Below the pieces are notes generated by a model. The model saw only the letters and a list, made by a program, of their open reading frames with translations, did not search any database and had not been told where the DNA came from. This document shows, one piece after another, positions 8,724 through 64,000 of a stretch of 64,000 bases of DNA. Made by a program: the position numbers and the translations under genes. Source of the DNA: Iphione sp. A-MEVVRFRX5 (taxonomy: Eukaryota); NCBI GenBank assembly GCA_976226885.1, contig OZ320322.1, positions 47,554,001 to 47,618,000 of the forward strand, written 5' to 3'. Every line of letters begins with the position of its first letter. The first letter of the stretch is position 1.

Positions 8724-8725
<2 letters not shown>

Positions 8726-9636
8726 GCTCCCCGTCCTGCCCAAGCAGATTCAACAAATGACCAGATAGTGTTAGGCCGAGAACCCTGCATGGGAAATTAT
8801 GCAATTTATATTCTGACTACGTCAACATTTCAAAGTTATTTCTCTCCGCTAGATGACACAAAGCAGGCCTCTCATTTTGCAACATAGAGTACAATATCCA
8901 TTGGAAAACGCTGTAATTATTTATATTATATGATTGCTTTTACCGGCACCGCATCCAAAGTGTCATTTTCCATGCATTCGTTACTTAGTTGCCCTGGCAT
9001 TTGTAATTGTATCTCGTAGGTACTGAATAACAAAAGCAATATATACACGTACAACGTATTCCTTGATGCATATCGTGCTGCGTTTATGCTATCAATTGCA
9101 ATGCAGTATAATTGTATTTCAACGTACCTGTCAGGTTTTCCAAATAGTATTTTTTTAAGTTATTATATTTATTTATTCACAGTGTTTATCGTTCGTTTTC
9201 GAGGATCTCGAACAATGCCTGTTGTCCAATTCACATTTTATCTACTACTTACATTATTAGTCGAATTGCAAATTTCCGGACAACTCCTTTGTGTGAAATA
9301 TAGTCCAATGAAAATTGATAAAAGTGTTACTATTATTTAGCGGCTTCAGATAGCGCCCTAGTGGAGGCTTTCTTCATACATATCCCATACATCCTAGCAA
9401 GCACAACATATATTGCAATTAGCAAGTTCGATAGTTCATGGTTATTGTTGTTGTTGTTCTTGGCAAATATTCAAGAATGTTGTTTGTCGGGCAGCTTTTT
9501 TTTCCTTGGATAATCCATAGATAAGAGCCTTCGTCATACTGTGAAGGGGCGAGACATGTGTAGGTAAGTGGATAACTTGTGAAACAGGTGGCTTGTCTGG
9601 TGCACACACCTTGGCAGAGCCGGCATAGTCCCATCT

Positions 9637-9641
9637 ACACA

Positions 9642-9674
<33 letters not shown>
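9637..9674. repeat. (CA)n microsatellite
   Basis: Direct reading: AC run with one interruption. Confidence 0.95.
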
Positions 9675-9678
<4 letters not shown>

Positions 9679-10149
9679 TCGCTCAGTGGCGATGGCACTA
9701 GGCTTAACACATATCAAGCGCACACTCACACACAGTAAGGGGCCTCGCTAGGGGGAGAAGAGCCTAGAGCCCACCAGGCGGCGCATGTTAGCCCGCCGTC
9801 GACAGCGCCCACTAGCGACGGGCGACGGCCTCTGGGATTAGCTACGTGCCTGGTAGAAGGTGTTTGCGCCATGTTGGTAATGGGGAGGTAAGGGTCATGA
9901 GCGAAGATGTGAGGCGGCGCTTGACGTACGGACCGGTTCAAGGTGTACTCAGTGCGGGGCTATCAGGTTAGGGTGAGGAATGGGAGGAACGAGCCTTTTG
10001 GTAACATCCACTCATCTGGTTAAGTTGTAACAACAGCCGTGTCTTTACGTTTTGCTGGAGTTCATGACCAGACTCCAGCACATCTGTCTATGGCGAACCT
10101 AATGTTTAATGCAGTGTGAGATTTCCGCAGTCACATCAAGTGTGATCTT

Positions 10150-10660
10150 CGTCTAATGGACGGTGCAGACTGAGTGAAAGAAATGCAAAAAGAGTTCCGT
10201 TTTCGTTGGCACGTAATGGCAGGTGTGACATGTTCCAAAGGGTTGGTGAACGAAATATCGTGGCAAAAGTTATATGTAAGGGCGGCTTGTGAAGGCACCG
10301 TTTGATTTATGTGGATTTTATGCAGGGAATTCACCTCTGACCTAGCATCAAGATGATTTAATCCATGTATGTTGTATTGCATCTCACGCGTGCGCACAAC
10401 ACAAGGCTCCTCTTAATGCGAGGGCATCAACTGCATGGAATTCATAAATGTTTGAATCGGAGCGTAAATATCCAGGTTAATGGTGCGCAGAAGGGGCCAG
10501 ATTCTAATCGATGGGACTCCGCGGGTCCTCCAGCATTCTGGTGGGTGCTCTGACTGTCGTGTTTGGGGTCAAATTAGATTCAGGCAGCTCTGGTTACTAG
10601 CACCAACACACCAAGATATGGATGCATCTCCGGTGTCTCCTGTGAGGGACGGGGGGATGT
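10150..10660 (-). mobile_element. Degenerate CR1/L2-type LINE ORF2 3' fragment
   Basis: Minus-strand MHPYLGV at ~10605-10627 resembles the YLGV motif following the RT core. Downstream LHKIHINQ...RKRNSF loosely resembles CR1/L2 C-termini. Multiple stops and frameshifts. Confidence 0.4.
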
Positions 10661-11019
10661 TATAACATGATCAACCTGAGCCAAGTGCCTTGTGCGGGAA
10701 TCCTCTTCATACAAGCTGACTCTGAGTAGGTTTAGAGGGGACCTGACGATCAATGAACACCGCCGTTCATACTATAAAACACATAGAGCTTTAAGGTTAA
10801 TGTAATCGTCTCTGGGATACACACAAAAAAAATACAACACGGTCGCATTGTGTATAATATCATCGCTAAACCACATGAATGTATAGTAAACATGCACGTG
10901 TAAACCTCATAGTCGTGGAGGTATCTCTAGGCGTTATATTGCAGAACAAATATGGCCAAATGCATATTACATTTTTGGAGTCAATCATAAACTAAATATG
11001 ACCACATGGATTTAATATC

Positions 11020-11350
11020 GTAATTAAGACCAGGTACTAATAACAAGTCCATTTTCAGATACCCATTGCAAGGTGTCCCTTATTCCAAGCTGTAATTTTA
11101 ACCTGAGGGCTGTAACATTTGAGGCAGTTGCATTGACAGTAATGTCATCGACATACATTACTGTTTTTGGTTACTATATGTTTCTCTGGTAGGTCATTTG
11201 TCAGTATGCTAAATAAGAAATACTGCTTTTCACAGCATGATTGAAAGCTTTCAAGGCCATGTAGTGGCTTTGATAATCTGGCTTCTAGGCTTCTGTCCTG
11301 GGTGTAGTTCTGCAGTGGACCTGCAACGGTTGTTGATCCAAAGGTACTTT
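11020..11350 (-). mobile_element. Degenerate LINE (CR1/L2-like) reverse transcriptase fragment
   Basis: Minus strand reads LFSILTNDLP...(1-nt frameshift)...MYVDDITVNATAS...LQWVSENGLVI, matching the non-LTR RT LFxxYINDLP/YxDD/W-x-x-x-N-x-L motif order. Confidence 0.7.
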
Positions 11351-13825
11351 CATAGGAGGGTCGAAAAAAACCACCCTTATCAACCCCCCCCCCCCTCCAG
11401 CCTTTCTTTGAGTAGCGAATAAGGATAACCCGCTGCTTGAGGTGACAGCCCTCAGTGTGGTAGGGCTCAGGTGTGACATGACTGACAGGTAGTCAGCAGC
11501 ATGAGTGATATTTGCAACCATTGTTCCAGGTGTGACGAGTTGAACCCTTGCGCACTCACCCCACAACGGCATGGGGTTACAGAAGTTGCACCACGGCATG
11601 GTGTCTGGCTGCAATCTGCCATGTAGGTGCAAGGGCAGGCTTCAATGCCAGAGAGGTGGGGCTATTCCTTCTGGTCGCTCTAGCAAGCCCAGCCTCCCTC
11701 TTGTGATTACAGGTTATCTTACTCAACTCAGGACCTACATATAGTGTTCGTGGAGACTCTAGGTAGTAGTGGGACACCACCCTTTCAACCATAGAGTCAA
11801 CCCTCGGAGAGTTACAGGCTGGTCATACCATAGGCTTGGCTCTCACGAACAAGAGCAAGGGACAATACTCATGCTACTTCTCCATGCTCCTTATATCCTC
11901 ACCATGCCACCCTTAAGGGGTCTGTTTATCACGTCTTCACACAGCTGTTATGCAGTCACCACCGACAGTGATTCATCAGTCAGAAGGCAATGATGCTCTT
12001 TATGGCCAATCACAGTCCAGGTACAGTTGGTAGAATCATTACCAGCCTATCAGGGGTTGCAATTTGTGAAGTAATACAAAGTAACAAACAATTGACCAAT
12101 GGTCAAAATCAGAATTTTCTAAACATCCCAAGTGACAGTTGTGTGATTGGTCTGAGCCAATCAGTTAACAGGGTAATAGTATCTCATAGAATATCCTAAT
12201 AATCCACAGAATGTGTGGCAGCTCCACGCAATCTGCAGGTCTGCGTTTGCTGAACCCATACTCTATGACGTCACCCTCACATTTTTGACTCTTGACTATA
12301 TTGAATAATACATAATGGCCTTCTGGATATGGTATCATTTCATAACTATATCATAAATCACTTTCGACCTCAGGTGTAAAGTATCATATTTGAAGTGGGG
12401 ATCGCAACACGTTTCGTAAGTGTCGTATCGTTTCTAGACTACGTTATAAAACAGCTAAGGCTTGTCAGCATATCGCATCTTTGATCCACATTTTATAACA
12501 AATATGGGCTAGAAGCCTGGTAAATTTTAAAAGAAAAACATGACTAATGCGCATGTCATCATCTCTAGATAATATCTCTAGATAAGATAATAGGTCAGGC
12601 TTGCATTCTGCTTACTTCAACATTCTACTGTCCCAGATAATAAAGTAATTCGCTTATCTCTTCTAAACAATTCACTAGAGCCTTGAAATTGCACATTGCA
12701 CATCTTCAACATAACTGTGGCATAAACCTTAAATGCAAATCAGGTGCCGTAAGTATAAATTAGGTGCATAGCAATAATCAAAGGTGATTGGCAAGGTGTC
12801 AACGCTGGACTACATCATAAAACATGGTTTTCCTTGTTAGTCCCGTGGGTAACTAACACTTTAGTCACACACTCTTTCCCTCTCGTTTAAGGGAATGTAT
12901 GGTCGTATTTAATTGAACACTGATAGGTTGAATCAATAGATGCCTGCCTATAGCAGAATGACAAAGGTACAGAGAGTAAATGTAAGCGTGAAACTGATAC
13001 ACATTTACATCTACAGGTAAAAAGTGAGGCAGTGATTTAGAGTGAGTATTTTCCACGGCTAAGGGAACGACAGCACATAACCGCTGACGCTGACGTGGCT
13101 GGGTTTCCTGTGCCCGCCAATGTAGATGAGATGGACTTATGCATTGGTAAATGAATTGGGTGGATTATAGCAGAGCGGCTATCTCACCATGTAAAGGACA
13201 GGGGTCGGCCCGGGTCAAGGTCACTAACAGAGGTCGCTCGTGTTCTGTGGCCGGGTGTGGCGTGTTTTGAATGGCATGCTGACAGATAAACAAAGCTTTC
13301 AGAGGCTGGTATGGGCAAAGAGATTTAAACAACTGACTGGACTGTAACATGGGAGCAAAAGCATCAGGGCCAGTGGAGAACAAACCTTGAATCCCATATG
13401 AAAGTGAAACGGTACCCCAATTGGTTTTGTCAGGTTACTGTCGACAATTAAGTCGGGTTGCCTTGTTTTTTTTATTGCACTGCTTACCGGATGAATCAGC
13501 TAAATTAAAGTGATGAGCATGGAAACCATTTAAACCGAATCAACTGTTTTTTGAACCCTCACTTAAAAAATATTGATTCTGTCGCCTCCTTGTTTGATGT
13601 CCCTATTTACATTTCTCCTGCCCTTTAACAGCATTTATCACCTGATTGTTGAGGAAGATTGTGAAATTCTATCTTCAGCTCTCAAATTTACAAAACCTTT
13701 CGACAATCGTAGTCGTTCAAATGTCCTTAACGTTATCAGGGAAGGGCGAGAGGGGGGGGGGTGCAAGATTGTTTGCTTGCGGCAGGGAAGATTCCATTCG
13801 GCCAGATTGCCTGGCGATTGACTGG

Positions 13826-13832
13826 TATAAAA
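13826..13832 (+). promoter_or_regulatory. Candidate TATA box (TATAAAA) within a CpG-rich patch
   Basis: Exact TATAAAA followed ~22 nt later by an Inr-like cagtc. TGACGC-TGACGT (13085-13096) and CCAAT (13117-13121) lie upstream. No transcript evidence. Confidence 0.3.
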
Positions 13833-45691: not shown

Positions 45692-46316
45692 ATGGGGAAG
45701 AAGGACCCGATGAACCTGTACGAGACTATACCCGAGAAGGGCTCGTCGAACAAGAAGGCTGCAACGCCAGGCTCCTTCCAGCGGGAACGGGTGCGCTACG
45801 TCAAGGATCCACTGGGGGAGACCAAATATGCCTACCACATTAACTACATGGGTGACGGTCAGGGCAGCGGCCAGGGCAGCGGCGGAGGTCAGGCTGGAGG
45901 AGCAGGAGGACCGGACCAGGCCCGCTACGCCACCAACACGCCCTTCGAGCAGCAGGGCAGCCGCACGCTGCCCTCCAACATGAACAGCCGCCGGTCGGTG
46001 TCCGACGCCCCCCGGCGGGCGGTGGCCTTCTCCGGCGACGAGGTCATCCCACCGCCCAACAACTTTGTCGTGTCGGACCATGATACCTACCTGAACGATC
46101 CGCAGTCCCAGTACAACCGGGAGAACAATATGCACGGTGGGGCGACCCAGCCGTACCACCCTACCTCCTACGTGGTGGACGAGGCCGAGCAGAAGAACAT
46201 TGCCAAGGAGAAGCTCAAATCTGACAAGGGCTGCTGCTCGGCTCCACCCTGCTGGGCCTGGGTCATAATCTTTCTCTTCCTAGCCGTACTGGCCGCCGTG
46301 CTCTACCTTATATTTG
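45692..46316 (+). CDS. PAN-protein exon 1: cytoplasmic N-terminus and TM anchor
   Basis: MGKKDPMNLYETI...KEKLKSDKGCCSAPPCWAWVIIFLFLAVLAAVLYLIF, ending G|GTAAGT. Acceptor cctatag| at 45612 shows a spliced 5' UTR. Confidence 0.92.
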
Positions 46317-49300
46317 GTAAGTATACACTCCATGCTTCTATTCTATCCAGGATAAATACTGTACCACGTGGGAAAAAAGTCGTAAAACAAGTTCTACTTT
46401 TTCAAGTGTATTTTTTTGTATGTGGCCAAATGATAAAGATGTTCAAGATGCGTGTATAGATTGTAAAGGAACGAAAACTAACGAGGCTGTTCGGTGCCAG
46501 GAAACCATGTTTAAAGCACTTCCTACTAGATAGTAAAAAAGATCCGCTACAGAGACGAATAATTACTCCGATTACAATTTTGACTAATTTAAACAAGGAA
46601 CTTCAGTTAGATATGGGAAAGAGAAACGTCCCCACACATATAAGGTAGCGATAAGTCCGCCCATCCCACCCACTCCTGACGATCTAAGTGCCGGGACCTA
46701 TATTTACGGTTGGTTGCTGGGATTGCGGATCCGAAAAGGGAAAAAAGAAACACACGAAGCACGATTCTCACCTCCATTGTTCCATAACCAGTTTGGTAAG
46801 AGTCCTTCAGAACTAAGTCACCTACGCCTGGCAACCAGCATTATTCCTATGGTATACTGGGCGCGTGGTTGTCTCTGGGTACATTATATATATGACAGTT
46901 ATAATTATCCGAAGAGAAATTTTGGATATACATGTGTATTTAGGTGTAAGAAGAGGAGGTCGATAGTCTATAGCACATTCTTCGCTCACATTCGGCGAAT
47001 TCGAGCATGATTCACATATCCGATTTAATTCTTGGAACACTCTCTGTTGGGTGTGATAATTGTAGTTAATTTAAATATCTTATAATGACTTTTTCCCAAG
47101 CGTTAATTACTTGGCAGCAGTGTTTATTCCATGTATACTCCTTTACAGTATCTTATGCTTTACAAAGGAATCAATTTCGAGTGTACCAACCGACAAGCGA
47201 TAACAGTGTTATGATTCCAACAGAATTTATTTATGCTCACCTAGAATAGAGTAGGCCTAATGGTATATAAAACTAATACAACAAATTTTAGTCTACCGCC
47301 TTAGAGGACTGCTCTATTAATTTTCAACACGATTTTCTTTCTCGTTTTTCTAATGGGTCGATTTCACTGAAACGTGCCATATGACTAGTGCAATGTCATT
47401 TAGATAACATTTTGTTGTCATAGACAAGCGTCTTTGGCGATTGCACCCCCCCCCCCTTCCCACACACACACAGACACACACAAATGTAAAAAGTGTGGCT
47501 GACTGAAGGCTGATGGTTTACAACTTCGGTTCTGCATGACTGACTACAGGCTCACTGATACAAAGTGCCCTACATCAAGCTGAAGAATTAGTCCCACAAT
47601 CTGTAGTTTTTTTTCTTTCACACCCCTTCATATGTTACAAATCATATGCAATTCTTTACCATTTTAGAAGCATTGAAGTAATCAGTGGACAGAAAACCAA
47701 TTATTAAGTTTTTGATGAAGTCTCACACTTATGAGACCTCCTCCCCATGGCTCTACTACTTTCAGGCAACGTTTTATATAGGTAGTGTAACAAGATGAGA
47801 AACTGAGTGACTAAAATTAAGGAAACATTAATTATCATATGTAATAAGCATGTTTATCATATGTAATGTAAAGATGTGCATAGAGTATAAAGTGGTCCCT
47901 GCTTTAGATTGCTTTATATTTTGTTGGATATATAGGAGTTATCAGTTTATGGAACTATTTCAGCTGCTTTTTCATATTTGTTTCCCCGAGAACATTTTGG
48001 TTAAGCATTATTTATCACTTATAAAGTCATCGGATTAGAGGGGACCACTGCACACTATAGTACACGTCGTTGATTGTTTGGATTTGATTATTGTACTTAA
48101 ATAACTATGTCGTGGACAACATATCTAGAATGCTAGCTCAGGATCTGAATCATTTACTTTCAACTTTTGAATCCATCATCTTACGGAGTGAGTCAAAGGA
48201 AAGCAACTCATGGCCAAACAGCAAGAAATCAGCTTTATTGTTGTGTCAAGGAAAGGTGTTGAGAGACAATGCATTCTTTATGAATCCACAGATGAATTTC
48301 ATTCAGAAGAAAAACCTATACAATTTTACTATAAGAGCTGGTTTGTGATCTCAAAAACTATGACTTATTTTGAAGTTACTACGAAAATTATGTATATCCA
48401 TGTTATGTATTACATGTACTTTGGTTCAATAAGATTATGAACTAACACTATTTTTCTGCCATGCTATAATACTTTCAACTGTAGAATTATGACCGTTGTT
48501 TAGTGATGCCCAGTGATTTCACTTAAACACGTGGTGAAATGTCACCATTGTAACACCTCACTATTCCAGTATGATTTCAACCAAATTTACTTAGTACAGA
48601 ATGAAACCATTTGGTGTGGGGGAAAAACCCTCACAATTCTAGTACCCTCACTATTGCAGACGTAATCTTTTGGTACAAAGCAGTGTTGCAATATTGAGGT
48701 TTGCCTGTAGGCCTTCCATAGACATTACATGGGTTCAGTCTAGTAATTTTAAAATCAGTAATTAATTTTTGCATATAGTTGACAGAAAGGTTCGTTTCTT
48801 AGATGAATACTTTATAAGAATTATAGCAGTGTTCAGAATATTCTTCTCTTTCCTGATTTATATCACCATACCTGACCGTTTCCCCACGTTACATATCATT
48901 TGTGTGGAAGTTTGTTTTAGACCATTGGTCGAAATAAGGCTTTGCAGTGAATTGCTGATCCTGTTTCCCGCAAAGAACGTTTTACAGACATTAACGTTGT
49001 CCCATTTAATCTCTTTAGCGATGACTGCAAGCGTGTAAAACATACCACACGACAGCAAACCCCCTGGTGCCCCAACAGAAGGAATTAACCCCTAACAGTA
49101 GGATTCAACCCTTCGAACATAGTAACAAATCCCTTTCGATACATTACCAAAGGGAGACAAACAAAATAGGTCGACTAAATTGAGAACGTAAAACTATTCA
49201 GCGTCCGTGAATAATCGAGCCTTGACATCTGGAAAATGGATCGTCATTCCTCGATTTAACCCTAAATATTTTCATTTTTTTTTTAAAGGGATGCAACAGT

Positions 49301-52300
49301 ACTGGTATAGGTATTCTAATCGGGGATGATCTTGAACTGAGTAGACAGAAATCTGTCGCCCACTCGACATCATTTTAAAATAAATGAGGCGGTCCACTGA
49401 ATGTACCTGTCAATGATAACAAGTGAGCGAAGAAAACGTCGTTTTACAGGCTAACAGCTTCTTGTTAAAAACTTACTTTCAGTTCGAAAATGTCAGTATC
49501 TCGAGGGCATGTCATCAATCTTAAGGTACTCTGAGCAGCAGCAAGCTCTAGATACTAACAGCTTCTCTCTGCCAAAAGGCTGATTACGCTTAGATAGTTA
49601 AAAAGACATCAACGACATCTTGGTTTAGTGTGCTAGACTGCAGTAGATTCTCTCAAAGTATGGATGACATTGTTTCTCCAACACAAGAAAGGTCTTGTAA
49701 TACATCACATTTCCTGTCGCGGATTTCATATTGACTCTGAACTACATGTACATGATTTTATCTTGTTCACTCTCCTTTGCTGGTATGTAATGTCTAGAAG
49801 TATTCCAAAACCACTTTGTTATGAGATTGGCTTGAGTGGTGGGCACTTTTCAATGTAGGTGTGGGATTATGCAAATTCTTTATTACACATAAATTGAAAC
49901 TAAAAGCATGATAGACAGTTTCCATGTGAGAGGGAACCTTCAAGGACGTAACAATTCATGCTTTCTCCTACCGGTGACGTATCATCTAGCCTTTAATCAG
50001 TCAGAACCCACTGTTTCCATATCACTTCACCACGACCACTCTACTCCAAGGGCCAGTGCATTGTTCCCATTTCAGACCCTTATGCAAAGAGGTCTCAGTG
50101 ATATGTTCGAGAAAGTTGTTAGTAAATGTATTTATGTTGCGCTCCAAGGTGTTCCATCAAAAACATTGAAGTATTTCCTCCTCCAAAAATTTGGCTCTGG
50201 TTCAGCTTGCTGTGGCTGGACATCACGTGTTACATTATGCCAGCACGAACCCCAAATATTGTCCTGCTTCAGAAAATAATGTATGTGTTGCTTCTGAACC
50301 ATGAGAACATTACACATCTTTGATAAAGAAATGATAACTATATAGGTTTAAACTGCGCTACTTTCATGTCATATATGTTAGCTTACCACAATATAGTAAT
50401 CCAAGATTGTAAATTCATGCTCTTATTATCTTGCCAACACAGTGTCTGTCTTACTAAATATCTCAATATTCAAAGTCCATTACCTTCCACCTTTTGTTTT
50501 ATTGTGCTGCTCGCTCTCACATACCCTTTTAGTTTCACTAGAAGAATATCGGTACATTGTATACTGGAGAGGTGAAATAAAATATTTCATGCATTCATTC
50601 ATTCATTCATCTTGCATGGCCAGGAGATTTTATATCTATAGCATGGAGAAGCAAAACACGGTGATCAAAGTGTATACTTTGCAGTTGGCAAAATACAATA
50701 TTTGGTGCTTTTAAAATAGATATGTTGTTATTTCCAGCTCAAGTCCTAGTTCCACGCGCGCCGGGTAAGGCACTCCTTAACACGACAGTTACATCACAGG
50801 GAACAACAAAGACGACAGGGTCAAAGGGTTCTACGAGCTCGATGGGTACTTCTACCCCTGCATCAGCCCCTGATGAGACAGGTATACAAGTCCTGCTTGC
50901 ACTCTAGAACTCCCAGACTTTTACTCCTGTGTGATTTATGAGTACGTGTACATGTACCTGTGCTGGTATATGTAGTGGTAAAGAGTCTTTGGGAGAGACG
51001 GTTCCCAGTAGTACTGCCAAGTCCTTGACAAGTGGAGGGCTGCGATGCATTTAGGATTCATTGAGTTAGTTCTACCTGGACGCATTTAACTACTCGAAAT
51101 GTCTTTCCCTCATTCTCTTGGTGATTACCACCTAAAGAGTTTCAGTTAAGGGGAATGATTAACCTAAAAGGTACGAGGGTTGTCCGGGGGAAGTGGGTTT
51201 CAGCACGAGTGATCCAGTTAACTATGTCTTTCAGTCATCTAGGCCATACGTTTGGCTCTAGCATTCGACATGACCCGTGTCTAATACACTTCAATTAAAA
51301 CGAAATTACGTGCACCTTTCTGTGGTCATCAAGACCTCAATTACCTTGCCATTTGAACCTGAGGCGAACCAAGGTGTCAGTTGTAGTATTCTTGCTGCCC
51401 CAAACAGATTAAGTATACTTGAAGAACAATAAGAAAATTATTGTACTTCTTTCTTATGAAGTGTTATTTCAATCCTCCGTCTTTGTCAGAAACAAGCCAA
51501 GCCAGTAAACCAGTGCTAATCTGTTATGGTCGAGCTTTAAAGTTCCAGTGGATACGATTCAACCCAGCAGTCAATTCTTTCAGCAATCAGCCAAAAATTA
51601 ATTTGAATGACAATTAACATGATGAGTCAAGCAAGGGGAAATGCTTAAGTAGAGAAGCGATGCAGGTAATTTTCATTATACCTCCATTTCCTTGCCAGCA
51701 AATAATCATTTCCTAAATAATAATTTGCATCAGTTCATATGGAACAGGAGATTCACCTCCCTAAATAGAGGTCAGTGTTATTATTTCAAAAAGAGCATAA
51801 AGTTGCCACGTTGAGTTCTTGCCCCTGGCTGTCCTTCACCCGTGAAGGTTACGGTCGGGTAGCCATGCCTCACGAGAATATAAGACTAGATTAAGGATGC
51901 TTCCTTAGAGGGAAACTACCTCGGGTATAAGCGACAAGGGAATAAACCGGTTTTCAATATCCTCGCACTCTTTGCGGGGATAAAAACTGGCAAAAAATGA
52001 AAGAGTTTCAAAATTCTGTACTACATCTGATAATTATTTATATATCAAGATAAACAAAATATAAGACATTTACATATAAACATGTGTACACGTTCTGACG
52101 GGTGTCCACGTGCACTGATAACATCTTATGTAAATGAAAAAGTCAATCCGGTCTAGGCTGCCACTGTTTTCCCACCGATACTATAGCCATATTGCTATGG
52201 GTGACTGCACCCGCTGATGACCAAAGCATTTTGGTGTATATGCATTATTAGATATGGTTGCCAAGGTCAAATTAAGGTATTGAAACTCTTACACTTTAAT

Positions 52301-55300
52301 TATGTCCAGTCATATATCTCCGCTGCTGCATCTCATGTTTAACACGAAATTGTATCATGCTTGCCAAATGCTTCTTAAAATAACCTTTAAAAGCAGATTT
52401 CAGCACATAATAACTCGATTATCTCAGTGACAGCAGATGAAAGACATTTCCATCGTGGCACAAAAACACAGTATGCCTACACCAAACTCCCTCCTCGTAA
52501 ATCGTGACACTTTGGGCATGACCGTAAATAATAGACCTAAATCTATCTCTTCCGGAGATGAATGTACATGTAAACTACTACTAGACAAAGCGGGACTCGC
52601 TTAAAGGTGACCCTGCCTTCAAGTGTCTTTTCTATATTCTCGAGCTCTCAGAGCTAAATATCTCTCTTTTTGATATGAATGTACACAAATTTATTAAAAG
52701 CAGAATTTGCTCAGGGTTAAAGGTGCCTCTCCCTCAAATTGCAACTCTAAGACCTTTCTGAAATGAATACATATGTGCAAGTGTAACCTAAAACAAAGAA
52801 GTAACAATGACAATCATGCAAATTTGAATATTTCCTAGTTCAGATGCTATTTAAAAACACATTGTTGCGGTGGTTAACAAGTAGTTTAGGCTCAGCTTTC
52901 CACTGTCGATAAAAGGTTACAAACGCTGCCAAGCTTACATTTATATACCATTTTCCCAGCCATTATGATGGCTCCTAAAAAGGCTGCTCATATTGAGCCT
53001 GTGGATGTGGTGGGGACAGGGCCGGAGGTGGGAGGGAGATCAAAACCATTGCTGCCGTTCAAGATGCCTCGCGACAAAATGTCTCTCTTTCTCTCTACTG
53101 GCGACGCTTCTCACCACCTTTTCATGTGCCATCCGTTTAGCCTGCCATCGGTGAGCTCTGACAAGCCGGGGTTAAACCACTTTGCTTTGCCTGTGCAGCT
53201 CCGTTGCTGAAAACCTTCCTGTTGACCGAGCACACACGGAGCGTTACGCGCAGCTCGTCGACCTTGCTGGAACGGTCGGCCCGGACGGCCGCCTCCTGCC
53301 AGCGGGCCTGCGTAAGCTTCAGGGAACCCTGCTTCGGGGTGGACTTCACGACAGACGGCCAGATCTGTCAGCTTATAACCAGATACAACTACGAGCTCGG
53401 AAGGCTTGGCGGTTCGCCAAACATATCCAACTACCGCCGGTCGTTCGAAGCCAAATGTGATTACTTCCCTCTTTTTTCTCTCTCTCCTTTAAATGTTGCC
53501 TCCTGTTGCCATGGCATAGTTTGAAAGAACGGAACTTCCTGGTCCGTAAATGCCGATCTTAACATGGTTAACGACTTACCGTCGTTCATGAGAATACGTC
53601 GATTCACTGTTGTCGCTTGCATCTGCTATCCTCGTTTTAGAGTGGACAGAAGATACAGATTCAACAGTTGGATTTATACCGTACTGAAATTTAATGTAGT
53701 AAATGTAGCCGGCTGTGAACAAGAGTATCACTAAAAACAAACCGCTTACTATCTTTGAGCTTTTTATTGTCACGTTAAAACGAATTTCACAAAACCAATA
53801 AAGATCACTCCATAACTCGTTCCCTACTAACGCATACTGCTTTGCCCTTCGCCTTTTAAGATCTCAAATAGATTTCCCTTCATTATGACCTTTGAACACA
53901 AACCCACTGCTTCTCTCCAGCTTTCTGCCAGGAGTCGTTGTACTTCCACACTCACCGCACCTTTCGGAGCAGCGTACGTTTCATAGCCCAGCGAGACACG
54001 GTCAACAGCAAGGAGCTGTGCCAGGAGCGATGTCTGGGCCCGTTCAGAAACGGTCGTCTGGACTCCGGCTTCAGGTGTACGGCGGCTGCCTTTGACTCCT
54101 CGCGGAGCCGCTGTCTGCTGACGGACGCCAAGTACGACCCATCCATGCTGGAGGACTCCCAAGACTCCACGCACTTCCTGAACGATGGCATCGAATGCCT
54201 GCTACAACCCCAATCAGGTGGGTGGTGGTGGTGGTGACGGTGGTGGTGGCCGCAGCTGTGGTGCTGACGAGGTCCACCTGTGGCCTGCACTCAACACCCA
54301 AGTAGGTCCCTCTTTGACTTCACTGGCACCTTGTGACAGGAGGGTAGAAGGTGGGCGACTAAGATCAGTCACTGCCCTGATGACCGCAAGAAGGCAATGA
54401 CAAGGCGCTTTGGCTTGTCTGGGAGGGGAGAGAGAGGAGATGATGGAGAAAAAGCGCCCTTTACGCTTAGTGATCAATAATCAGGGGGCAATAGAAATAC
54501 GGCCATGTTTCATTACTTTCAGCTCACACTTTTAGAGAAATGTCAATGATGGGTGATTATATCGTCTGGCAATCCAACTGATGTTGACTAAATTTAGTTT
54601 GACACAGACGGCTAAAAAGAAATTGCCATTATTATTATTTATCTTACTATTGTTTTATATTACACGCGTTATTTTCTTCCACCTTATCTCATTCGACCAG
54701 TTTAACAGGAACGGTGTTTTCCACGATTGCTGTCAGTTTGTTAAATGGTTGTTGAGTTTTGAATCTTAAAAAGATGTAGCTGGAAGGAAGCAGGAAATGA
54801 ACCTATCGTCAAACTCAGGAAAGGTTACCCTTTCTGTGCCTGAGAACGAAGGCAATGAAGTAGAGGTGCTATTTTGCAAGCTCTTGCTGTCACTGTTCCC
54901 AGGCTTTAGGCAGTATTGTTGTAGGCCTATTTATACATGCATATTGGCAACTCGAGTAAAAAGGTTTTCCCGTCTATTCATTATTGCCAAATACCTCTTC
55001 GAGTTCTTTACCTTTATATTTCTTAGAAGATTTCTTTCTTCAATTACCTCCTTGTTTTACACGTGCATTCTGTCTCCTTTTCATCACACTTTCTGTCTCA
55101 TTACATCTTATACCAGACCTCACGATAATCATAGAAACTTACGTAAGATTTTGTGTGAACAGGCCTGATTGATCATGTCCTTCCTTTTGGCTTTACCTCA
55201 CAACGAACATCTATCTATGTGACTGTGTGTACAGAATTTCATTTCCACATGGGCGCTGGCGAAAATATCTTTGCTACCAGAGGAAATTGTTGTGTTATAC

Positions 55301-55699
55301 AGCTATTGGTAGATCGCTTTTAGAAAAAAAATGTATGGAGAGGATGCGTCGCTGAGAACATTGTACAAACTCTTTTTCCAGCGTGTTCACTACGTTTTAA
55401 TCTGCTTCGAATGAATGGGCAACCAGCGGACCTAGATGCGAGTCTCCGGCAAGACGGCCCGCTCAACGTGCCCGAGTGCGCAAGCGCCTGTGTCAACTTC
55501 CGCAACGACGATGGCGATAAATGTTCGGGTTTCGTGTTTACTTACAGCGACCAGCAGCCGTGTACTCTGTACACAGGCAAAACGACCGCCTCAGTGCAGG
55601 AGGCTGAGGGCGTCGACTTCTACGAGGCCGGGACCAAGAGATGTGGTCAGTACACATAATACATTATAAGCGCACATTGAGTGCACTCGCCGTTTGCTG

Positions 55700-55762
<63 letters not shown>

Positions 55763-58700
55763 TGTGTGTGAGACAGAGAGAGAGGGGGTGGGGTAGGTGG
55801 GTGTTTTAGGAGGAACGTTTTAATTCACTGTGTGTATAGGAGGGGGAGAGGTTTTCGCCCTCATACTATCACCGACGTCTTCCCACAATCTTCATCACAA
55901 AGTAGTTCATCTAACAGACATTATAACCACCCTAGATAAGCTTAGACGTTCTGTGCTCAAGAGCTGGAAGTCCCCAGCTTTTTCAACGTAGAAAGGCTCT
56001 CTCTTTGAAATGCTCGTCGATTCTGCACATAAAGGCCACGCCCGATTAACAGATTCCTTCAACCACCAGCGCTTCATCCACACATTCACACACATATATT
56101 CATCCGCAGTGAATAGCCCCGGCACTTTCATCATTATCAAAGGAAATCTGTATGACAGCCGTATCTCACCATCCTTTGATTATTGTACAGTCTTATCAAC
56201 TCATCGCCATGTATCTAAAGTGGGGCCTTTTTTAATCTTATCCTGCAGAGGAATGCGGCTTCATCCGACAAAGGGACAGTTCTGCCTGGGGCGGCCTTCT
56301 GGAAAGAAATGCCGTCACTCGAACCGCCTGTGCTGACGCCTGCCGTCAGAAGAACGAAGACGATCGTTGCTACGGGTATGACTTTACCACGGACAACATG
56401 TGCTATCTTATCGGCGAGAGGGGGTACACACTGAGGAATACCTCCAACACTGACAACTACCGAGCGGACCCGGCATGCCTAGGTCAGCCACCCAGAGTAT
56501 CTCTTCTTGTATATAAACATATGGAGTACTGTCTATGCGGGCAGGTCAAATGGCGCCGCCATTGTTAGTATGAACAGAGCTGAAGGCGACGAGGCCAGTC
56601 CTGTGTTACCTTCTGGTTTGTGTACATGAATGATGGGGATGGCGCATTCCAAGAGTTCCAACTAACTACATGTTCACGTATTTCCATTTCTAAAACCTGT
56701 AATGCCGTTATAAATGAAGAGCGATAAAGATTATAGGCCGTGCCGCGCATGCATCATGGCAGGAGTCCTGTCCATAAAGAAGGTGCCCAGCTTGAGTGTA
56801 TTGCTCTCATATATAACCTGAAACAGCAGCCACGCAGCTCATTCTGATCGGTATTCTCAATTTCCGGGTGGCAGCTACAATAAGGATGAAGAATAACTTA
56901 AAGCATAACGCCTAAGAATTCAAATGTCCAGGAAATGACATGGTGGGCATATGGTCCCTGCGAGGAGGGCTATTTGCTAGGCAATGTGAACGAGTTAGCG
57001 GCCATTCATAGTCACGCCCCCTACAGGGAATGTGCTAATTGACTGGCGTCCTGCTAGTCCAGGAGACCATCTCACAGGGGGACATTGCTTGTAGTATCAA
57101 TAAGTAGTATACTGATAGTTATGAACACTAAAACTAATACACTCATTATCAGGTCAGGATTTTAGAGTATAGAATAGAAGAAAAAATTAGTAACAAAAAG
57201 GTAGCTTTTCAAGTGAACCGCTATAGTACTTTATGAAGGTTGTTTAAACTGTCTTTCTGGGGAAAAATTGCTCTCTAAACAAATATATTATCAATGAATA
57301 TCAACTTCTTTCAGGCCTTCTCTCTATGTTTAATAACTGAAAGATATATCGTCATGAATCCAGTTCTCCCCTAGCATTATGTACGCAACAGAGTCAGAAT
57401 GAGTACAACAATTTCAGAATAGTGTTTGTGGATACATTTCTCCATGACAGTGCACTGTTCACCTGCGTATGCTAACAGCTATGAGGTCTTGATAAAGGAA
57501 AGTTAGGATGGAGTATGAATGGTTTTGAAAGCATTCATCAAGGCAACTCATCATAGTTTTTATGTAATCAGACAAAATGTTTGATTCAAGTTCGTTTGAG
57601 TAAAGATAGCCTTTATGTAATGCATTGGTATCAATATGAATACATGTATTCATGTATTTCCCAGATTAGTACAACAGCCTGATGACCTTCTGTGGTCCAG
57701 CACCGAAAGATCATCTCATATTCATATCAATGCTATGCCCTTGTTTTGTTTTGCTGAGTTACAGTACATCTACATGTGACATGAAACATGCATAGTGTAT
57801 ATAGTACTACTACAATGGAAAGCCACCTCTGCAACACATCTCGAATCGGGACACACTTCAAACAGGGACTCTTTTGGGAAGAACAGAATTAATTTTCCAT
57901 ATTCCGTACAAAGTGTCCAAAGAATAGGTGTCCAGAATAGAAACTTTCCATTGTATGTTTATGTATCTATAACATGTTCATTTCCTTTCATACATGTGCA
58001 TGAATATGATTTGCCTTCCTCTGAATTGATGTATCTTTACGTGTGTGAACCCCAGGTAAGCATTCTTGTTTTAGCTACCCCTGTAGTTTTAGCTTCTATT
58101 TGTAGTCCCACCTCACCCCTGTAGTCTATGCTGCCAACCCAGATTTTATTGTAGTAACAACTATGCATGCAGTACCAGCTACTTCCAACGAGTCCCCACT
58201 TTCCTAATGCAGTCACAGTTACTATCGTTACAATGGTTCTGGCTATCTACCTTAGTTCAAGTTCCCAAAGGAGCTCCAACTTCTTCTCACTGCAGTCCCA
58301 ACCATCCCTCTAGTTCTAGCTACCCAAAACAGTTTTAGCTAACCCACTCTAGTTACACCTGCCCTGTAATCCTTGCTTCCCCTTGGATTCCTATGTACAC
58401 TTCTGTCCTGGTTGTCCCTAATTGTACAAGGTACCTCATTTAGTCTAGCTACTTATTTCCCTTGTATTCTTACCTCTGTACGTAAACTAAATCACCATAG
58501 TATACTCCTGTTGCTGAGGCTACACCTGCTGTCCTACCTACTCCCTGTAGTCCCACATTGATAGTCCCTACACTCTCCCTACAGTCTCAGGAATCCTATA
58601 CTCTAGTTTCAGTTGTCTTTTGTAGTTCTTGCAAATCTACAATACTCTTAGCTACTTTTGTGTCATACCACCGACCACCGTCGTCTCACCCATAAAGTCC

Positions 58701-59950
58701 TAACCGCTCTTTCATGATCCCTTTACTTGCAGCTTCCCCTGGATTCCCATTTCACCTTGGCCCCAACCGCCCCGTCCCTGGTAGTCCCATCTCTTTCTCG
58801 ATTAAAATCTACTTCTTTCCTCGACCACAGACTGTCGGCCGAGCCAGTTCATCTCGACCAGCCTCACCGAGCCCATCGGCGGTCGCCTGCTGCGCCACCA
58901 GGGGCTGACAGCGTGCTCGCGGGCCTGCCAGAGGTCCTCCGAGTCGTCGGAGAGCGGCCACCGCCGCTGCTACGGCTTCTCCTACAACCGCCGCACCAAG
59001 GACTGCTCGCTCTTCCACAACTTCGGCTACCGCCTCAACTCCATCGGTGTCACGCCCGACGGCTACCATTACCGGCGACTGTTCTCCTGCGGTAAGTCGT
59101 CCGACTTCCACGCCAGGTCGAGTTTCCCAACTGTTTGCCATTGGCGGTGGAATCTGGAATCTTTTTTATTACCCATTGACAGATGAAAAAACAATGGAAA
59201 ACGGAGGGCACGGGTGCATTTCTAGTCTTCCTCCGCTTTTAGATATTTTCCTAACCTTTTAACCCTCTAAGATCTTCATCGGAGAAGAAACAAGTAATAA
59301 TTACCAACAGCATAATATCTTTAGTATCCGAACGGGTGGATTAGAAAAAGGCAGCTTATGCACATTAAAAGCCCTTGAGAACGTAAAATGACAGTTATAA
59401 TCTTCACATCTGAAATGCTAGAGTCAGGCGACACTTTGTTTTATAAAGTACGTGTACAGACAGCAAGGTACCTTTGGCTTAGATGAGGAATTACACAAGT
59501 AGTTTACCTGTTCATAATCCCATGTGAGAAGAATTCTGAATACAAGTACATATATGCTCGTGGCTTTCTATATGCGCATGTGTATAAGTTAGATCGAGCA
59601 ATTTATCTGTAATTAACTGCTTTATTCATCTACGAAAGTATTTTTGTGCGACTGATTGTACGATTTTGCGGTCTTTCCATTCAGACTCCCCCTCTTGTAA
59701 TGCGTACGACATGACGGCCGATACAGAGGTGACCTCTGGTGACGGTTTGGTGCAGCCTTGGGACGTGAACACGGTAGCGAGGTGCCAAGACCGCTGCTGG
59801 GGCTACGGCCTGATCACCAACTCCAGCTGTGTGGCGCTGGATTTCAACCGTCGCAAAGACACCTGCACCCTCTACACAGACCCGGACTACCAGTTAGGGG
59901 CCCTCGGTCAAGCCATGGGCGTTGACCATTACAAGAGGAAGCCATGCTAG
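45692..59950 (+). CDS. Type II single-pass membrane protein with six tandem PAN/Apple domains (782 aa); join(45692..46316,50738..50881,53199..53456,53921..54217,55382..55645,56249..56482,58831..59091,59685..59950)
   Basis: Eight exons with GT-AG boundaries, all introns phase 1, summing to 2349 nt = 783 codons in one open frame. In-frame upstream stops and the gaaaATGG context support the start. One TM helix near aa 187-208. Six domains carry the PAN pattern C-x3-C...C-x2-(F/Y)...C-x-L...Y. Confidence 0.88.
50738..50881 (+). CDS. PAN-protein exon 2: Ser/Thr-rich stalk
   Basis: ttatttccag| acceptor, phase 1. AQVLVPRAPGKALLNTTVTSQGTTKTTGSKGSTSSMGTSTPASAPDET, then AG|GTATAC donor; 144 nt. Confidence 0.75.
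53199..53456 (+). CDS. PAN-protein exon 3: PAN domain 1 (4-Cys type)
   Basis: cctgtgcag| acceptor. ...AASCQRACVSFREPCFGVDFTTDGQICQLITRY...NYRRSFEAK. Donor T|GTGATT is weaker but is the phase-1 site that fits exon 4. Confidence 0.82.
53921..54217 (+). CDS. PAN-protein exon 4: PAN domain 2
   Basis: cttctctccag| acceptor. FCQESLYF...LCQERCLG...FRCTAAAFDSSRSRCLLTD...GIECLLQPQS, then AG|GTGGGT; 297 nt. Confidence 0.88.
55382..55645 (+). CDS. PAN-protein exon 5: PAN domain 3
   Basis: ctctttttccag| acceptor. ACSLRF...ECASACVNF...KCSGFVFTYSDQQPCTLY...VDFYEAGTKRC, then G|GTCAGT; 264 nt. Confidence 0.92.
55703..55770. repeat. Compound (TG)n-(TGCG)n microsatellite in intron 5
   Basis: Direct reading. 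Confidence 0.95.
56249..56482 (+). CDS. PAN-protein exon 6: PAN domain 4 (not in ORF track)
   Basis: cttatcctgcag| acceptor. EECGFIRQRDSSAWGGLLERNAVTRTACADACRQKNEDDRCYGYDFTTDNMCYLIGERGYTLRNTSNTDNYRADPACL, then AG|GTCAGC; 234 nt. Confidence 0.9.
58060..58790. repeat. Highly degenerate ~18-bp minisatellite in intron 6
   Basis: Recurrent units resembling GTAGTTTTAGCTACCCCT / GTAGTCCCA...CCT with strong C/T strand skew. Confidence 0.55.
58831..59091 (+). CDS. PAN-protein exon 7: PAN domain 5 (coding frame not in ORF track)
   Basis: ctttcctcgaccacag| acceptor. DCRPSQF...TACSRACQRS...RRCYGFSYNRRTKDCSLFHN...YHYRRLFSC, then G|GTAAGT; 261 nt. Confidence 0.93.
59685..59950 (+). CDS. PAN-protein exon 8 (terminal): PAN domain 6
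   Basis: tctttccattcag| acceptor. DSPSCNAY...RCQDRCWG...SSCVALDFNRRKDTCTLY...VDHYKRKPC-stop (TAG 59948-59950). Confidence 0.92.
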
Positions 59951-60099: not shown

Positions 60100-60105
60100 A
60101 ATAAA
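60100..60105 (+). terminator. Candidate polyadenylation signal of the PAN-domain gene
   Basis: First AATAAA, ~150 nt after the stop. Confidence 0.5.
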
Positions 60106-63810: not shown

Positions 63811-64000
63811 CTATAATTCTGTCACCGGGGAGTCCTCTTGGTGGTTCTGGTCGAGAGTAATCGTCTCGCGCGACGCCTTCACCATGGCGAGGTCGTTGGG
63901 CTTCAGGTTATTGCGCCTGGTTATGAAGTTACAAAACTGACAGAGCATATGCCAGTAGGCCTGTCTAAAGGCAATGCAGCGTGAGGCATAGATGATGGGA
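63811..64000 (-). CDS. C-terminal part (TM7 end, helix 8, tail) of a second class A GPCR, paralog of 21740-22897; truncated by the window edge
   Basis: Minus strand reads PIIYASRCIAFRQAYWHMLCQFCNFITRRNNLKPNDLAMVKASRETITLDQNHQEDSPVTEL-stop. 14 of 20 residues are identical to PIIYAARSAAFRQAYWKVIC of the first GPCR. Confidence 0.9.
   Translation of the reverse strand, partial: PIIYASRCIAFRQAYWHMLCQFCNFITRRNNLKPNDLAMVKASRETITLDQNHQEDSPVTEL

What the first reader, a model, noticed from the sequence alone, without database searches (positions are those of the whole stretch)
45692..59950. Type II membrane receptor-like protein with six tandem PAN/Apple domains and no protease or ZP domain
Seen in sequence: no signal peptide, ~185-aa N-terminal tail, basic residues plus a Cys cluster before a single TM, sequons only in the stalk and PAN domains cited (NTT, NIS, NTS, NSS), six PAN domains, and a stop immediately after the last Cys. 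Established: animal PAN/Apple domains are best known in secreted proteases and growth factors (plasminogen, HGF, factor XI, prekallikrein) and in type I PAN-ZP matrix proteins (NompA, NOAH, LET-653), and mediate protein or glycan binding. Inference: an inverted-topology, PAN-only surface receptor or adhesin, analogous to type II C-type lectin receptors. This is an architecture I do not recognise as a characterised family; it may act in recognition (immunity, gamete or self/non-self, symbiont binding).
Basis: partly seen in the sequence, partly recalled or inferred. Interest (0 to 1): 0.78.

Follow-up and report, generated by a model that had tools for sequence, protein, structure and literature searches.

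The report
Membrane-anchored six-PAN-domain surface protein gene
This is a real, intact animal gene for a cell-surface protein anchored by its front end, with six PAN/Apple binding modules outside the cell. The layout is kept in two related genes of another species, matches no named family, and its job is untested.

Summary
Window 45692-59950 (+) gives an 8-exon, 782-codon model. All junctions are GT-AG and all are in phase 1.

- Exon 1 encodes a 186-residue hydrophilic tail and one membrane helix, with no signal peptide.
- Exon 2 encodes a Ser/Thr-rich stalk.
- Exons 3-8 each encode one PAN module.
- TAG follows the last Cys directly.

All six modules are PAN-like, by Pfam, a left-out profile test, PDB profile hits and two AlphaFold models.

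The exon-1 peptide has two detectable relatives among 1.84 billion representative proteins. Both are exon-1-only reading frames from one other eukaryotic assembly (ENA ERZ25767047). At both loci the same layout follows on the same strand: tail and helix, six PAN modules in the same order, then a stop right after the last Cys. The splice junctions I compared sit at the same positions. Two alleles of one relative differ with dN/dS 0.13, which indicates purifying selection.

No protease, ZP or other domain is present. A convergent GPCR gene ends 3.9 kb downstream.

I read it as a type II PAN-repeat surface receptor or adhesin of a narrow lineage; earlier scan notes call the genome an annelid. This is a new variant of a known kind. 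Transcripts, ligand and function are untested. The joined protein was not searched or folded.

The parts
45692..46316 (+). Exon 1: start codon, 186-residue hydrophilic cytoplasmic tail and the membrane helix; ends in phase 1 at donor TTTG|GTAAGTA
   Evidence: ORF and junction. Single copy in the window's own genome. Two relatives, P0001 and P0002, with the same donor position.
45719..45730 (+). Tail motif YETI (residues 10-13). Tyr10 and Thr12 are invariant in the three genes; the full YETI is present in two of the three.
   Evidence: Alignment A2. Reading it as a YxxI sorting or docking motif is inference.
45800..45847 (+). Conserved tail block VKDPL ... YAYHINY (residues 37-52)
   Evidence: Invariant columns V37 K38 D39 P40 L41 E43 Y46 A47 H49 I50 Y52.
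46013..46030 (+). Conserved RRAVAF (RRVGF in both relatives), residues 108-113; fits the loose RVxF-type docking pattern
   Evidence: Invariant R108 R109 V111 F113. The link to phosphatase PP1 docking is inference from general knowledge and was not tested.
46250..46315 (+). Single transmembrane helix (residues 187-208), acting as a signal anchor; Cys cluster just before it
   Evidence: Hydropathy maximum 2.98. The PPxWAWxII...AVxY core is conserved in the relatives.
50738..50881 (+). Exon 2: Ser/Thr-rich stalk with the NTT sequon, phase 1-1
   Evidence: 38% Ser+Thr. A longer mucin-like exon that also ends at a phase-1 donor lies between exon 1 and PAN1 of relative B. No equivalent was found in relative A.
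53199..53456 (+). Exon 3: PAN module 1 (four core Cys only; NIS sequon)
   Evidence: Left-out profile E 6.8e-10. 41-43% identical to module 1 of the relatives. Donor AAAT|GT is conserved.
53921..54217 (+). Exon 4: PAN module 2 (six Cys)
   Evidence: Pfam PAN_1 23.9 bits against a cut-off of 21.4. 42-54% identical to module 2 of the relatives. The junction codon is Ser in all three genes.
55382..55645 (+). Exon 5: PAN module 3 (six Cys)
   Evidence: Weak PAN_3 match. A profile of the relatives' module 3 alone hits it at 9.4e-21. AlphaFold pLDDT 82; the top 50 fold matches are almost all PAN/Apple-type domains, TM-score up to 0.69.
56249..56482 (+). Exon 6: PAN module 4 (six Cys; NTS sequon)
   Evidence: Left-out profile E 1.3e-5; profile of the relatives' module 4 alone E 1.2e-12.
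58831..59091 (+). Exon 7: PAN module 5 (six Cys)
   Evidence: Pfam PAN_1 23.9 bits. 49-55% identical to module 5 of the relatives.
59685..59950 (+). Exon 8: PAN module 6 (six Cys; NSS sequon), with TAG directly after the last Cys
   Evidence: Pfam PAN_1 22.6 bits. 56-57% identical to module 6 of the relatives, which also stop right after that Cys. AlphaFold pLDDT 87, TM-score 0.72 to the HGF N domain.
60100..60105 (+). AATAAA, the likely polyadenylation signal

Best explanation
An intact, conserved gene encodes a 782-residue type II (N-terminus inside) single-pass membrane glycoprotein.

Shown by sequence and comparison:
- a start codon without a signal peptide;
- a 186-residue, low-complexity cytoplasmic tail with several short blocks conserved across three genes;
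- one membrane helix preceded by basic residues and cysteines;
- a Ser/Thr-rich stalk;
- six PAN/Apple modules that are not interchangeable, since each is closest to the same-numbered module in the relatives;
- an end directly after the last disulfide cysteine.

Inferred:
- the helix works as a signal anchor, so the disulfide-rich, sequon-bearing PAN array faces outward on a glycosylated stalk;
- the array binds a protein or glycan partner, as PAN/Apple modules do in HGF, factor XI, leech anti-platelet protein and the apicomplexan MIC4 and SML-2 proteins;
- the best-conserved, membrane-distal modules 5 and 6 are the likeliest contact site;
- the partner is a conserved one, not a fast-changing one;
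- the conserved tail blocks (YETI, VKDPL..YAxHIxY, RRVxF-like, cysteines next to the membrane) couple binding to sorting, endocytosis or signalling inside the cell.
For: Gene model: eight open exons, all GT-AG, all junctions in phase 1, 2349 nt with no stop.

Topology features.

PAN identity: Pfam; the profile of the six modules hits the HGF N domain and plasminogen in the PDB; left-out profile test; AlphaFold models of modules 6 and 3 match the HGF N domain, plasminogen and leech anti-platelet protein.

Conservation:
- The exon-1 peptide finds only P0001 and P0002 among 1.84 billion representatives.
- At their loci, six PAN exons follow on the same strand and end with a stop after the last Cys.
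- Module-by-module orthology is clear: diagonal alignment scores 106-284 against 23-108 off the diagonal.
- Conserved junctions: the donor after the helix, the PAN1 donor, and a PAN2 acceptor that gives Ser as TCT, TCC or TCA in the three genes.
- Relative B has a mucin-like stalk exon.

Selection: two alleles of relative A have a dN/dS of 0.13 over the PAN exons and only synonymous changes in exon 1. Their introns differ by 4-15% with indels.

No further domain. A convergent GPCR gene ends 3.9 kb downstream.
Against: - No transcript evidence was available, so the joins exon 1 to exon 2 to PAN1 rest on splice signals, phase and conserved linkage only.
- Exon 2 has an in-frame ATG (50722) followed by a short, weakly hydrophobic stretch.
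- No stalk exon was found in relative A.
- Flanking charge does not decide the helix orientation: about +2 on each side in the window protein.
- Net charge of the modules is not conserved, so no ligand class can be read from it.
- The ligand, the tissue and any tail partner are unknown. The tail motifs are short and could match by chance.
Confidence: 0.6

Rival explanations
1. The protein and topology are as described, but the role is structural. It would be a membrane anchor tying the epidermal or other apical cell surface to an extracellular matrix such as the collagen cuticle or mucus, not a signalling or endocytic receptor.
For: - PAN modules are common in apical-matrix proteins (NompA, NOAH, LET-653), and the leech PAN protein LAPP is known as a collagen binder (general knowledge).
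- LAPP is among the fold matches.
- The modules are conserved, under purifying selection and keep their positions, which fits a fixed endogenous partner.
- Earlier scan notes report giant cuticle-type collagens in this genome (not tested here).
Against: - There is no ZP or other polymerising domain.
- The long tail carries several blocks conserved at 38-46% overall identity, which suggests specific intracellular partners. A cytoskeletal linker would also have such blocks, however.
Confidence: 0.25
2. A fast-evolving recognition receptor for immunity, gamete recognition or self/non-self discrimination.
For: - The family is confined to a narrow lineage: only two relatives were detected.
- PAN domains are greatly expanded elsewhere in this genome.
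- Modules 3 and 4 are the least conserved, at 29-37% identity.
Against: - There is one copy in this genome and two in the other assembly.
- All six modules keep one-to-one orthology.
- The allelic dN/dS is 0.13, with 0-3 amino-acid differences per module. That is not the pattern of hyperpolymorphic recognition genes. It rests on one allele pair only.
Confidence: 0.1
3. Two separate genes: exon 1 belongs to a small membrane protein, and a secreted six-PAN protein starts at the ATG inside exon 2 (50722).
For: - An in-frame ATG at 50722 is followed by MLLFPAQVLVP.
- No transcript data exist.
- A phase match between two exons has a 1 in 3 chance.
Against: - That ATG lies inside the pyrimidine tract of a strong acceptor, and the hydrophobic run is only about 9 residues.
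- In all three genes the sequence diverges right after a perfect TTTG|GTAAGTA donor that follows the helix, so exon 1 must splice onward.
- Exon 1 is linked to the six PAN exons, on the same strand and in the same order, in three genes with very different intron sizes of about 7 to 15 kb.
- No other coding-like ORF lies in between.
Confidence: 0.07

Closest known systems
N-terminal PAN domain of hepatocyte growth factor and plasminogen
   Same: They are the nearest solved structures and sequence-profile hits for the modules: profile E 2e-6 and TM-score 0.70-0.72. The helix-on-sheet fold and the core disulfides are shared.
   Different: Those proteins are secreted, carry one PAN domain, and continue with kringles and a protease-like domain. 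Here there are six PAN modules, a membrane anchor, and no kringle or protease.
Factor XI / plasma prekallikrein (four Apple domains plus a protease)
   Same: Tandem six-Cys Apple-type modules used as a binding platform; weak fold matches.
   Different: They are secreted zymogens with a trypsin domain. The sequence similarity here is weaker than to the HGF type.
Apicomplexan multi-Apple adhesins (Toxoplasma MIC4 with six Apple domains, Sarcocystis SML-2)
   Same: The proteins consist almost entirely of tandem PAN/Apple modules and act as lectins or adhesins; weak fold matches.
   Different: They are secreted from micronemes with a signal peptide and have no membrane anchor of their own (general knowledge). 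They are protist proteins. No specific sequence kinship was seen.
PAN-ZP apical matrix proteins (NompA, NOAH-1/2, LET-653)
   Same: Animal PAN-repeat proteins at the cell surface or in the matrix.
   Different: They have type I or secreted topology and a ZP polymerisation domain. There is no ZP exon here, and the stop right after PAN6 is conserved.
Type II C-type lectin receptors (e.g. ASGPR, Dectin-1, CLEC-2)
   Same: The working layout matches: an N-terminal cytoplasmic tail with Tyr-based motifs, a signal-anchor helix, a stalk and a C-terminal binding ectodomain.
   Different: The binding fold is unrelated (C-type lectin domain against PAN). This is an analogy, not membership.
Leech anti-platelet protein (LAPP)
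   Same: A PAN-fold protein from an annelid; fold match with TM-score 0.70.
   Different: It is a small, secreted, single-module salivary protein. The sequence match is insignificant (E 0.88).

Membership tests
PAN/Apple domain superfamily (Pfam PAN_1 PF00024 and relatives) | HMM match at or above the curated threshold | tested here: met
   Modules 2, 5 and 6 score 22.6-23.9 bits against a cut-off of 21.4. Modules 1, 3 and 4 fall below the Pfam threshold, but a profile built without them recovers them at E 6.8e-10, 1.3e-3 and 1.3e-5.
PAN/Apple domain superfamily (Pfam PAN_1 PF00024 and relatives) | Four core cysteines in the C-x3-C ... C ... C pattern, with an optional outer pair | tested here: met
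   The four core Cys are invariant across 17 modules, and the outer C-terminal Cys is present in 90% or more. PAN1 has the core four only.
PAN/Apple domain superfamily (Pfam PAN_1 PF00024 and relatives) | Fold with a helix packed on a curved antiparallel sheet | tested here: met
   AlphaFold models of module 6 (pLDDT 87) and module 3 (pLDDT 82) match the HGF N domain, plasminogen and LAPP at TM-scores of 0.66-0.72. The alignments used for folding held only modules of this family.
Type II (signal-anchor) single-pass membrane proteins | No cleavable N-terminal signal peptide, and one internal hydrophobic helix | tested here: met
   N-terminal hydropathy is about -1, and the single peak of 2.98 lies at residues 187-208. 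An upstream in-frame stop rules out an N-terminal extension.
Type II (signal-anchor) single-pass membrane proteins | C-terminal part outside the cell | not testable with these tools
   This is inferred from 34 ectodomain cysteines in disulfide-type modules and from sequons found only after the helix. Flanking charges are about equal. Glycosylation mapping or protease protection is needed.
PAN-ZP apical matrix proteins | ZP domain C-terminal to the PAN modules | tested here: not met
   The stop follows PAN6 directly in all three genes. No Pfam hit was found in downstream ORFs. A convergent GPCR gene ends 3.9 kb downstream.
Plasminogen / HGF / factor XI protease-type PAN proteins | Kringle and/or trypsin-like domain | tested here: not met
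   There are no such Pfam hits in any exon or in the downstream and intronic ORFs.
Apicomplexan MIC4-type Apple adhesins | Signal peptide and soluble secreted protein | tested here: not met
   The N-terminus is hydrophilic and there is an internal membrane helix.

The most novel reading that the evidence does not exclude
This would be the founding member of a lineage-restricted family of type II PAN-repeat signalling or endocytic receptors. It would be a PAN-fold counterpart of the type II C-type lectin receptors. Its orphan tail would recruit kinases, adaptors or phosphatase PP1 through the conserved YETI, YAxHIxY and RRVxF-like blocks when the distal PAN modules bind their ligand.
Probability: 0.25. 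Interest if true: 0.6.

Novelty: new variant of a known kind. Interest (0 to 1): 0.4.

Why it matters
PAN/Apple modules are known mostly from secreted proteases and growth factors, from matrix proteins and from parasite adhesins. A conserved protein that presents six of them on a front-end membrane anchor, with its own conserved cytoplasmic tail, would add a receptor-type use of this fold. It would also give worm biology a candidate surface receptor or matrix anchor that can be tested directly through expression, ligand and tail partners. The finding is solid as a gene but modest as a discovery: new domain arrangements are common in invertebrate genomes, and nothing yet points to a specific function.

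Tried and rejected
- Word-index protein searches with exon 1, with a three-sequence PAN6 profile and with a three-sequence exon-1 profile found nothing beyond P0001 and P0002. These searches see only proteins of 0.55-1.75 times the query length, so full-length annotated relatives of the PAN part could not be sought.
- ESM Atlas look-alikes of the tail gave only scores below 0.8, which are uninformative.
- Pfam on the tail gave only sub-threshold hits, most of them over the membrane-helix end.
- Three literature searches for a type II or annelid PAN family found no such family. The PAN review PMC9249922 does not discuss membrane architectures.
- Rfam on the whole window gave no match.
- The bacterial promoter/terminator scan is irrelevant for an animal gene.
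- Net charge and pI of the modules are not conserved among the three genes, so the idea of a heparin-like polyanion site was dropped.
- GPCR synteny was not found in the fetched parts of the other assembly.
- A stalk exon was not found in relative A with my composition filter.
- N-myristoylation of the MGKK start was considered and rejected: Lys right after the Gly does not fit the usual pattern (general knowledge).
All searches were done exon by exon, by reference.
- Only one joined computation was run. It was an in-script dN/dS over the concatenated PAN exons of the two alleles of the other assembly.


Full report
**What is in the sequence.** The window is animal DNA with long introns and no Rfam match. 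On the + strand between 45692 and 59950, eight open segments join through canonical GT-AG sites:
- 45692-46316
- 50738-50881
- 53199-53456
- 53921-54217
- 55382-55645
- 56249-56482
- 58831-59091
- 59685-59950

Every junction is in phase 1. The sum is 2349 nt, that is 782 codons plus TAG. An in-frame TGA lies 9 nt before the ATG with no acceptor in between, so this exon cannot carry a longer N-terminus. AATAAA lies 150 nt after the stop.

**Topology features.**
- The first 186 residues are hydrophilic and 65% disorder-promoting. They contain ten tyrosines and no N-x-S/T sequon.
- Residues 187-208 are the only hydrophobic helix (mean hydropathy up to 2.98). It is preceded by KEKLKSDKGCCSAPPC.
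- The four sequons (NTT, NIS, NTS, NSS) lie in the stalk and in PAN modules 1, 4 and 6.
- The ectodomain has 34 cysteines: 4 in module 1 and 6 in each of the other five.
- The charges flanking the helix are about equal. The N-in orientation therefore rests on the missing signal peptide and on the disulfide and glycan content of the C-terminal part. This is inference.

**Are there six PAN domains?**
- Pfam PAN_1 passes its curated threshold for modules 2, 5 and 6. PAN_3 touches module 3 weakly. Modules 1 and 4 get no Pfam hit.
- The profile of all six modules matches each of them by construction, so I built a profile from modules 2, 5 and 6 only (window plus relatives). Searched against all 1684 ORF segments of the window, it ranks modules 1, 4 and 3 next, at E 6.8e-10, 1.3e-5 and 1.3e-3. 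Noise starts at 0.24.
- Profiles of the relatives' modules 3 and 4 alone hit the window's modules 3 and 4 (9.4e-21, 1.2e-12) and then cross-hit module 6.
- The six-module profile finds the HGF N domain and plasminogen among solved structures.
- The AlphaFold model of module 6 (pLDDT 87) superposes on the HGF N domain at TM-score 0.72, and also on plasminogen and leech anti-platelet protein.
- The model of module 3 (pLDDT 82) has almost only PAN/Apple-type domains among its top 50 matches, with TM-scores up to 0.69 but weaker Foldseek E-values.
- The four core cysteines are invariant in 17 aligned modules.

**Relatives.** Exon 1 is single-copy in the 1.18-Gb genome. That genome has large PAN arrays elsewhere (C1 near 143.84 Mb, and C13 near 16.6, 79.2 and 97.05 Mb). 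They score far lower than the six exons here: 54 bits or less against 80-111.

The word-index search with exon 1 found nothing. The exhaustive phmmer search of 1.84 billion representatives found three hits at E 0.001 or better. Two are relatives, P0001 and P0002. The third is a 1850-residue repetitive protein that looks like low-complexity noise.

P0001 and P0002 are exon-1-only reading frames called on long contigs of one ENA assembly, ERZ25767047. I walked along those contigs and scanned them with the PAN profile.
- Gene A (L005, +) has exon 1 at 931-1476 and PAN modules 1 to 6 from 8724 to 17352. An extra intron splits module 2.
- Gene B has exon 1 at L006 19534-20111 (-) and PAN modules 1 to 6 at L007 12718 down to 5025 (-).
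- In both genes the open frame ends directly after the last Cys of module 6.

Each window module is most similar to the same-numbered module of A and B. Diagonal alignment scores are 106-284, against 23-108 off the diagonal. Identities are 41-43% for module 1, 42-54% for 2, 35-37% for 3, 29-34% for 4, 49-55% for 5 and 56-57% for 6. The six-module array is therefore older than the split of these three genes, and the modules are not interchangeable.

**Splice conservation.**
- All three genes have TTTG|GTAAGTA right after the helix, and their read-through translations diverge at once.
- All three have AAAT|GT at the end of module 1.
- The module 2 acceptor completes that split codon as TCT, TCC or TCA, which is always Ser.
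- Gene B has a long mucin-like Ser/Thr exon that ends at a phase-1 donor between exon 1 and module 1. This matches the window's short stalk exon in composition and phase.
- I found no such exon in gene A.

These points support the joined model, but they do not replace transcript evidence, which I could not obtain.

**Selection.** Gene A is present on two contigs that look like the two haplotypes of one individual.
- Exon 1 differs at 4 of 543 nt, all synonymous.
- The PAN exons differ at 2-8 nt each, without indels and with 0-3 amino-acid changes per module. The three changes counted in module 2a lie in residues that probably read into the intron.
- Over the PAN exons dN is 0.011, dS is 0.086 and dN/dS is 0.13.
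- The introns differ by 4-15%, with indels.

The exons are thus under purifying selection. This one allele pair shows no sign of the hyperpolymorphism typical of self/non-self genes.

**No further domains.** The largest ORFs between the stop and 63810, and in the first two introns, have no Pfam hit. An intronless rhodopsin-type GPCR gene runs on the minus strand, with its stop at 63811, and continues beyond the window. It is 61% identical to the GPCR at 21734-22897 (+). There is no ZP, kringle or protease exon.

**The tail.** The three tails are 38-46% identical and share several short blocks:
- the start MGKKxPxNxYETI (Tyr10 and Thr12 invariant);
- VKDPL;
- E-x-x-YAxHIxY;
- RRVxF (RRAVAF here);
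- Y(L/M)NDP in two of the three;
- a cysteine and PPxWAW at the helix entry.

Pfam and the ESM Atlas give no family for the tail. Three readings are my inferences from general knowledge and are untested: YETI as a YxxI sorting or SH2 motif, RRVxF as a PP1-docking motif, and the cysteines as palmitoylation sites.

**What it most likely is.** It is a type II membrane glycoprotein that presents six PAN modules on a glycosylated stalk. It would bind a conserved protein or glycan partner through its distal modules, and connect to intracellular partners through a conserved but otherwise orphan tail. Whether it signals, internalises its ligand or merely anchors the cell to a matrix cannot be decided here. 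I put the receptor/adhesin reading first and the matrix-anchor reading second.

**Lineage.** Earlier notes of this scan call the genome an annelid. I did not test that. The leech PAN protein among the fold matches and the collagen notes make a matrix partner worth testing.

**Novelty.** No named relative and no paper describing a type II PAN-only family was found. The length-limited searches could not look for full-length annotated relatives of the ectodomain. I therefore rate it a new variant of a known kind, not a new kind.

**Limits.** Every tool query was a single exon given by reference.

Noticed in passing
window 21734-22897 (+) and 63811-64000 (-), continuing to about 64941 in L008: Two intronless rhodopsin-family GPCR genes, 61% identical to each other, bracket the PAN gene. 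The downstream one is convergent with it, and its stop lies 3.9 kb after the PAN stop codon. No GPCR was seen next to the related genes in the fetched parts of the other assembly.
   Followed up: partly
own genome, outside the window: G000:C13:79208710-79220816 (-): At least 25 near-identical PAN-like units lie at a regular spacing of 457 bp, all with the same profile score. This looks like a young tandem array or an intronless PAN-repeat gene.
   Followed up: no
own genome: G000:C1:143835886-143855178 (+), C13:97038513-97068459 (+), C13:16600977-16632729 (+): These are large clusters of PAN exons, 25 or more on C1 with short introns. PAN domains are strongly expanded in this genome. The C1 cluster is the nearest paralogue of the six modules here (about 54 bits against 80-111).
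   Followed up: no
L005 9728-10810: In relative A of the other assembly, PAN module 2 is split by an extra intron that the window gene and relative B lack. This is an intron gain or loss inside a domain.
   Followed up: partly
L002/L005 versus L003/L009 (ENA ERZ25767047): The two contigs carrying relative A look like haplotypes of one highly heterozygous individual. The synonymous difference is about 0.09, the intron difference is 4-15%, and there is a 1.9-kb length difference between exon 1 and PAN1. A file labelled as a metagenome assembly thus holds long host (animal) contigs.
   Followed up: partly
window 55702-55770: A (GT)n microsatellite of about 17 four-base units lies in the intron after PAN module 3.
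   Followed up: no
window 21809-23134 (-): A 441-codon antisense ORF overlaps the GPCR gene. Its Arg/Ala/Gly-rich translation looks like a by-product of the G+C-rich coding strand, not a gene.
   Followed up: no
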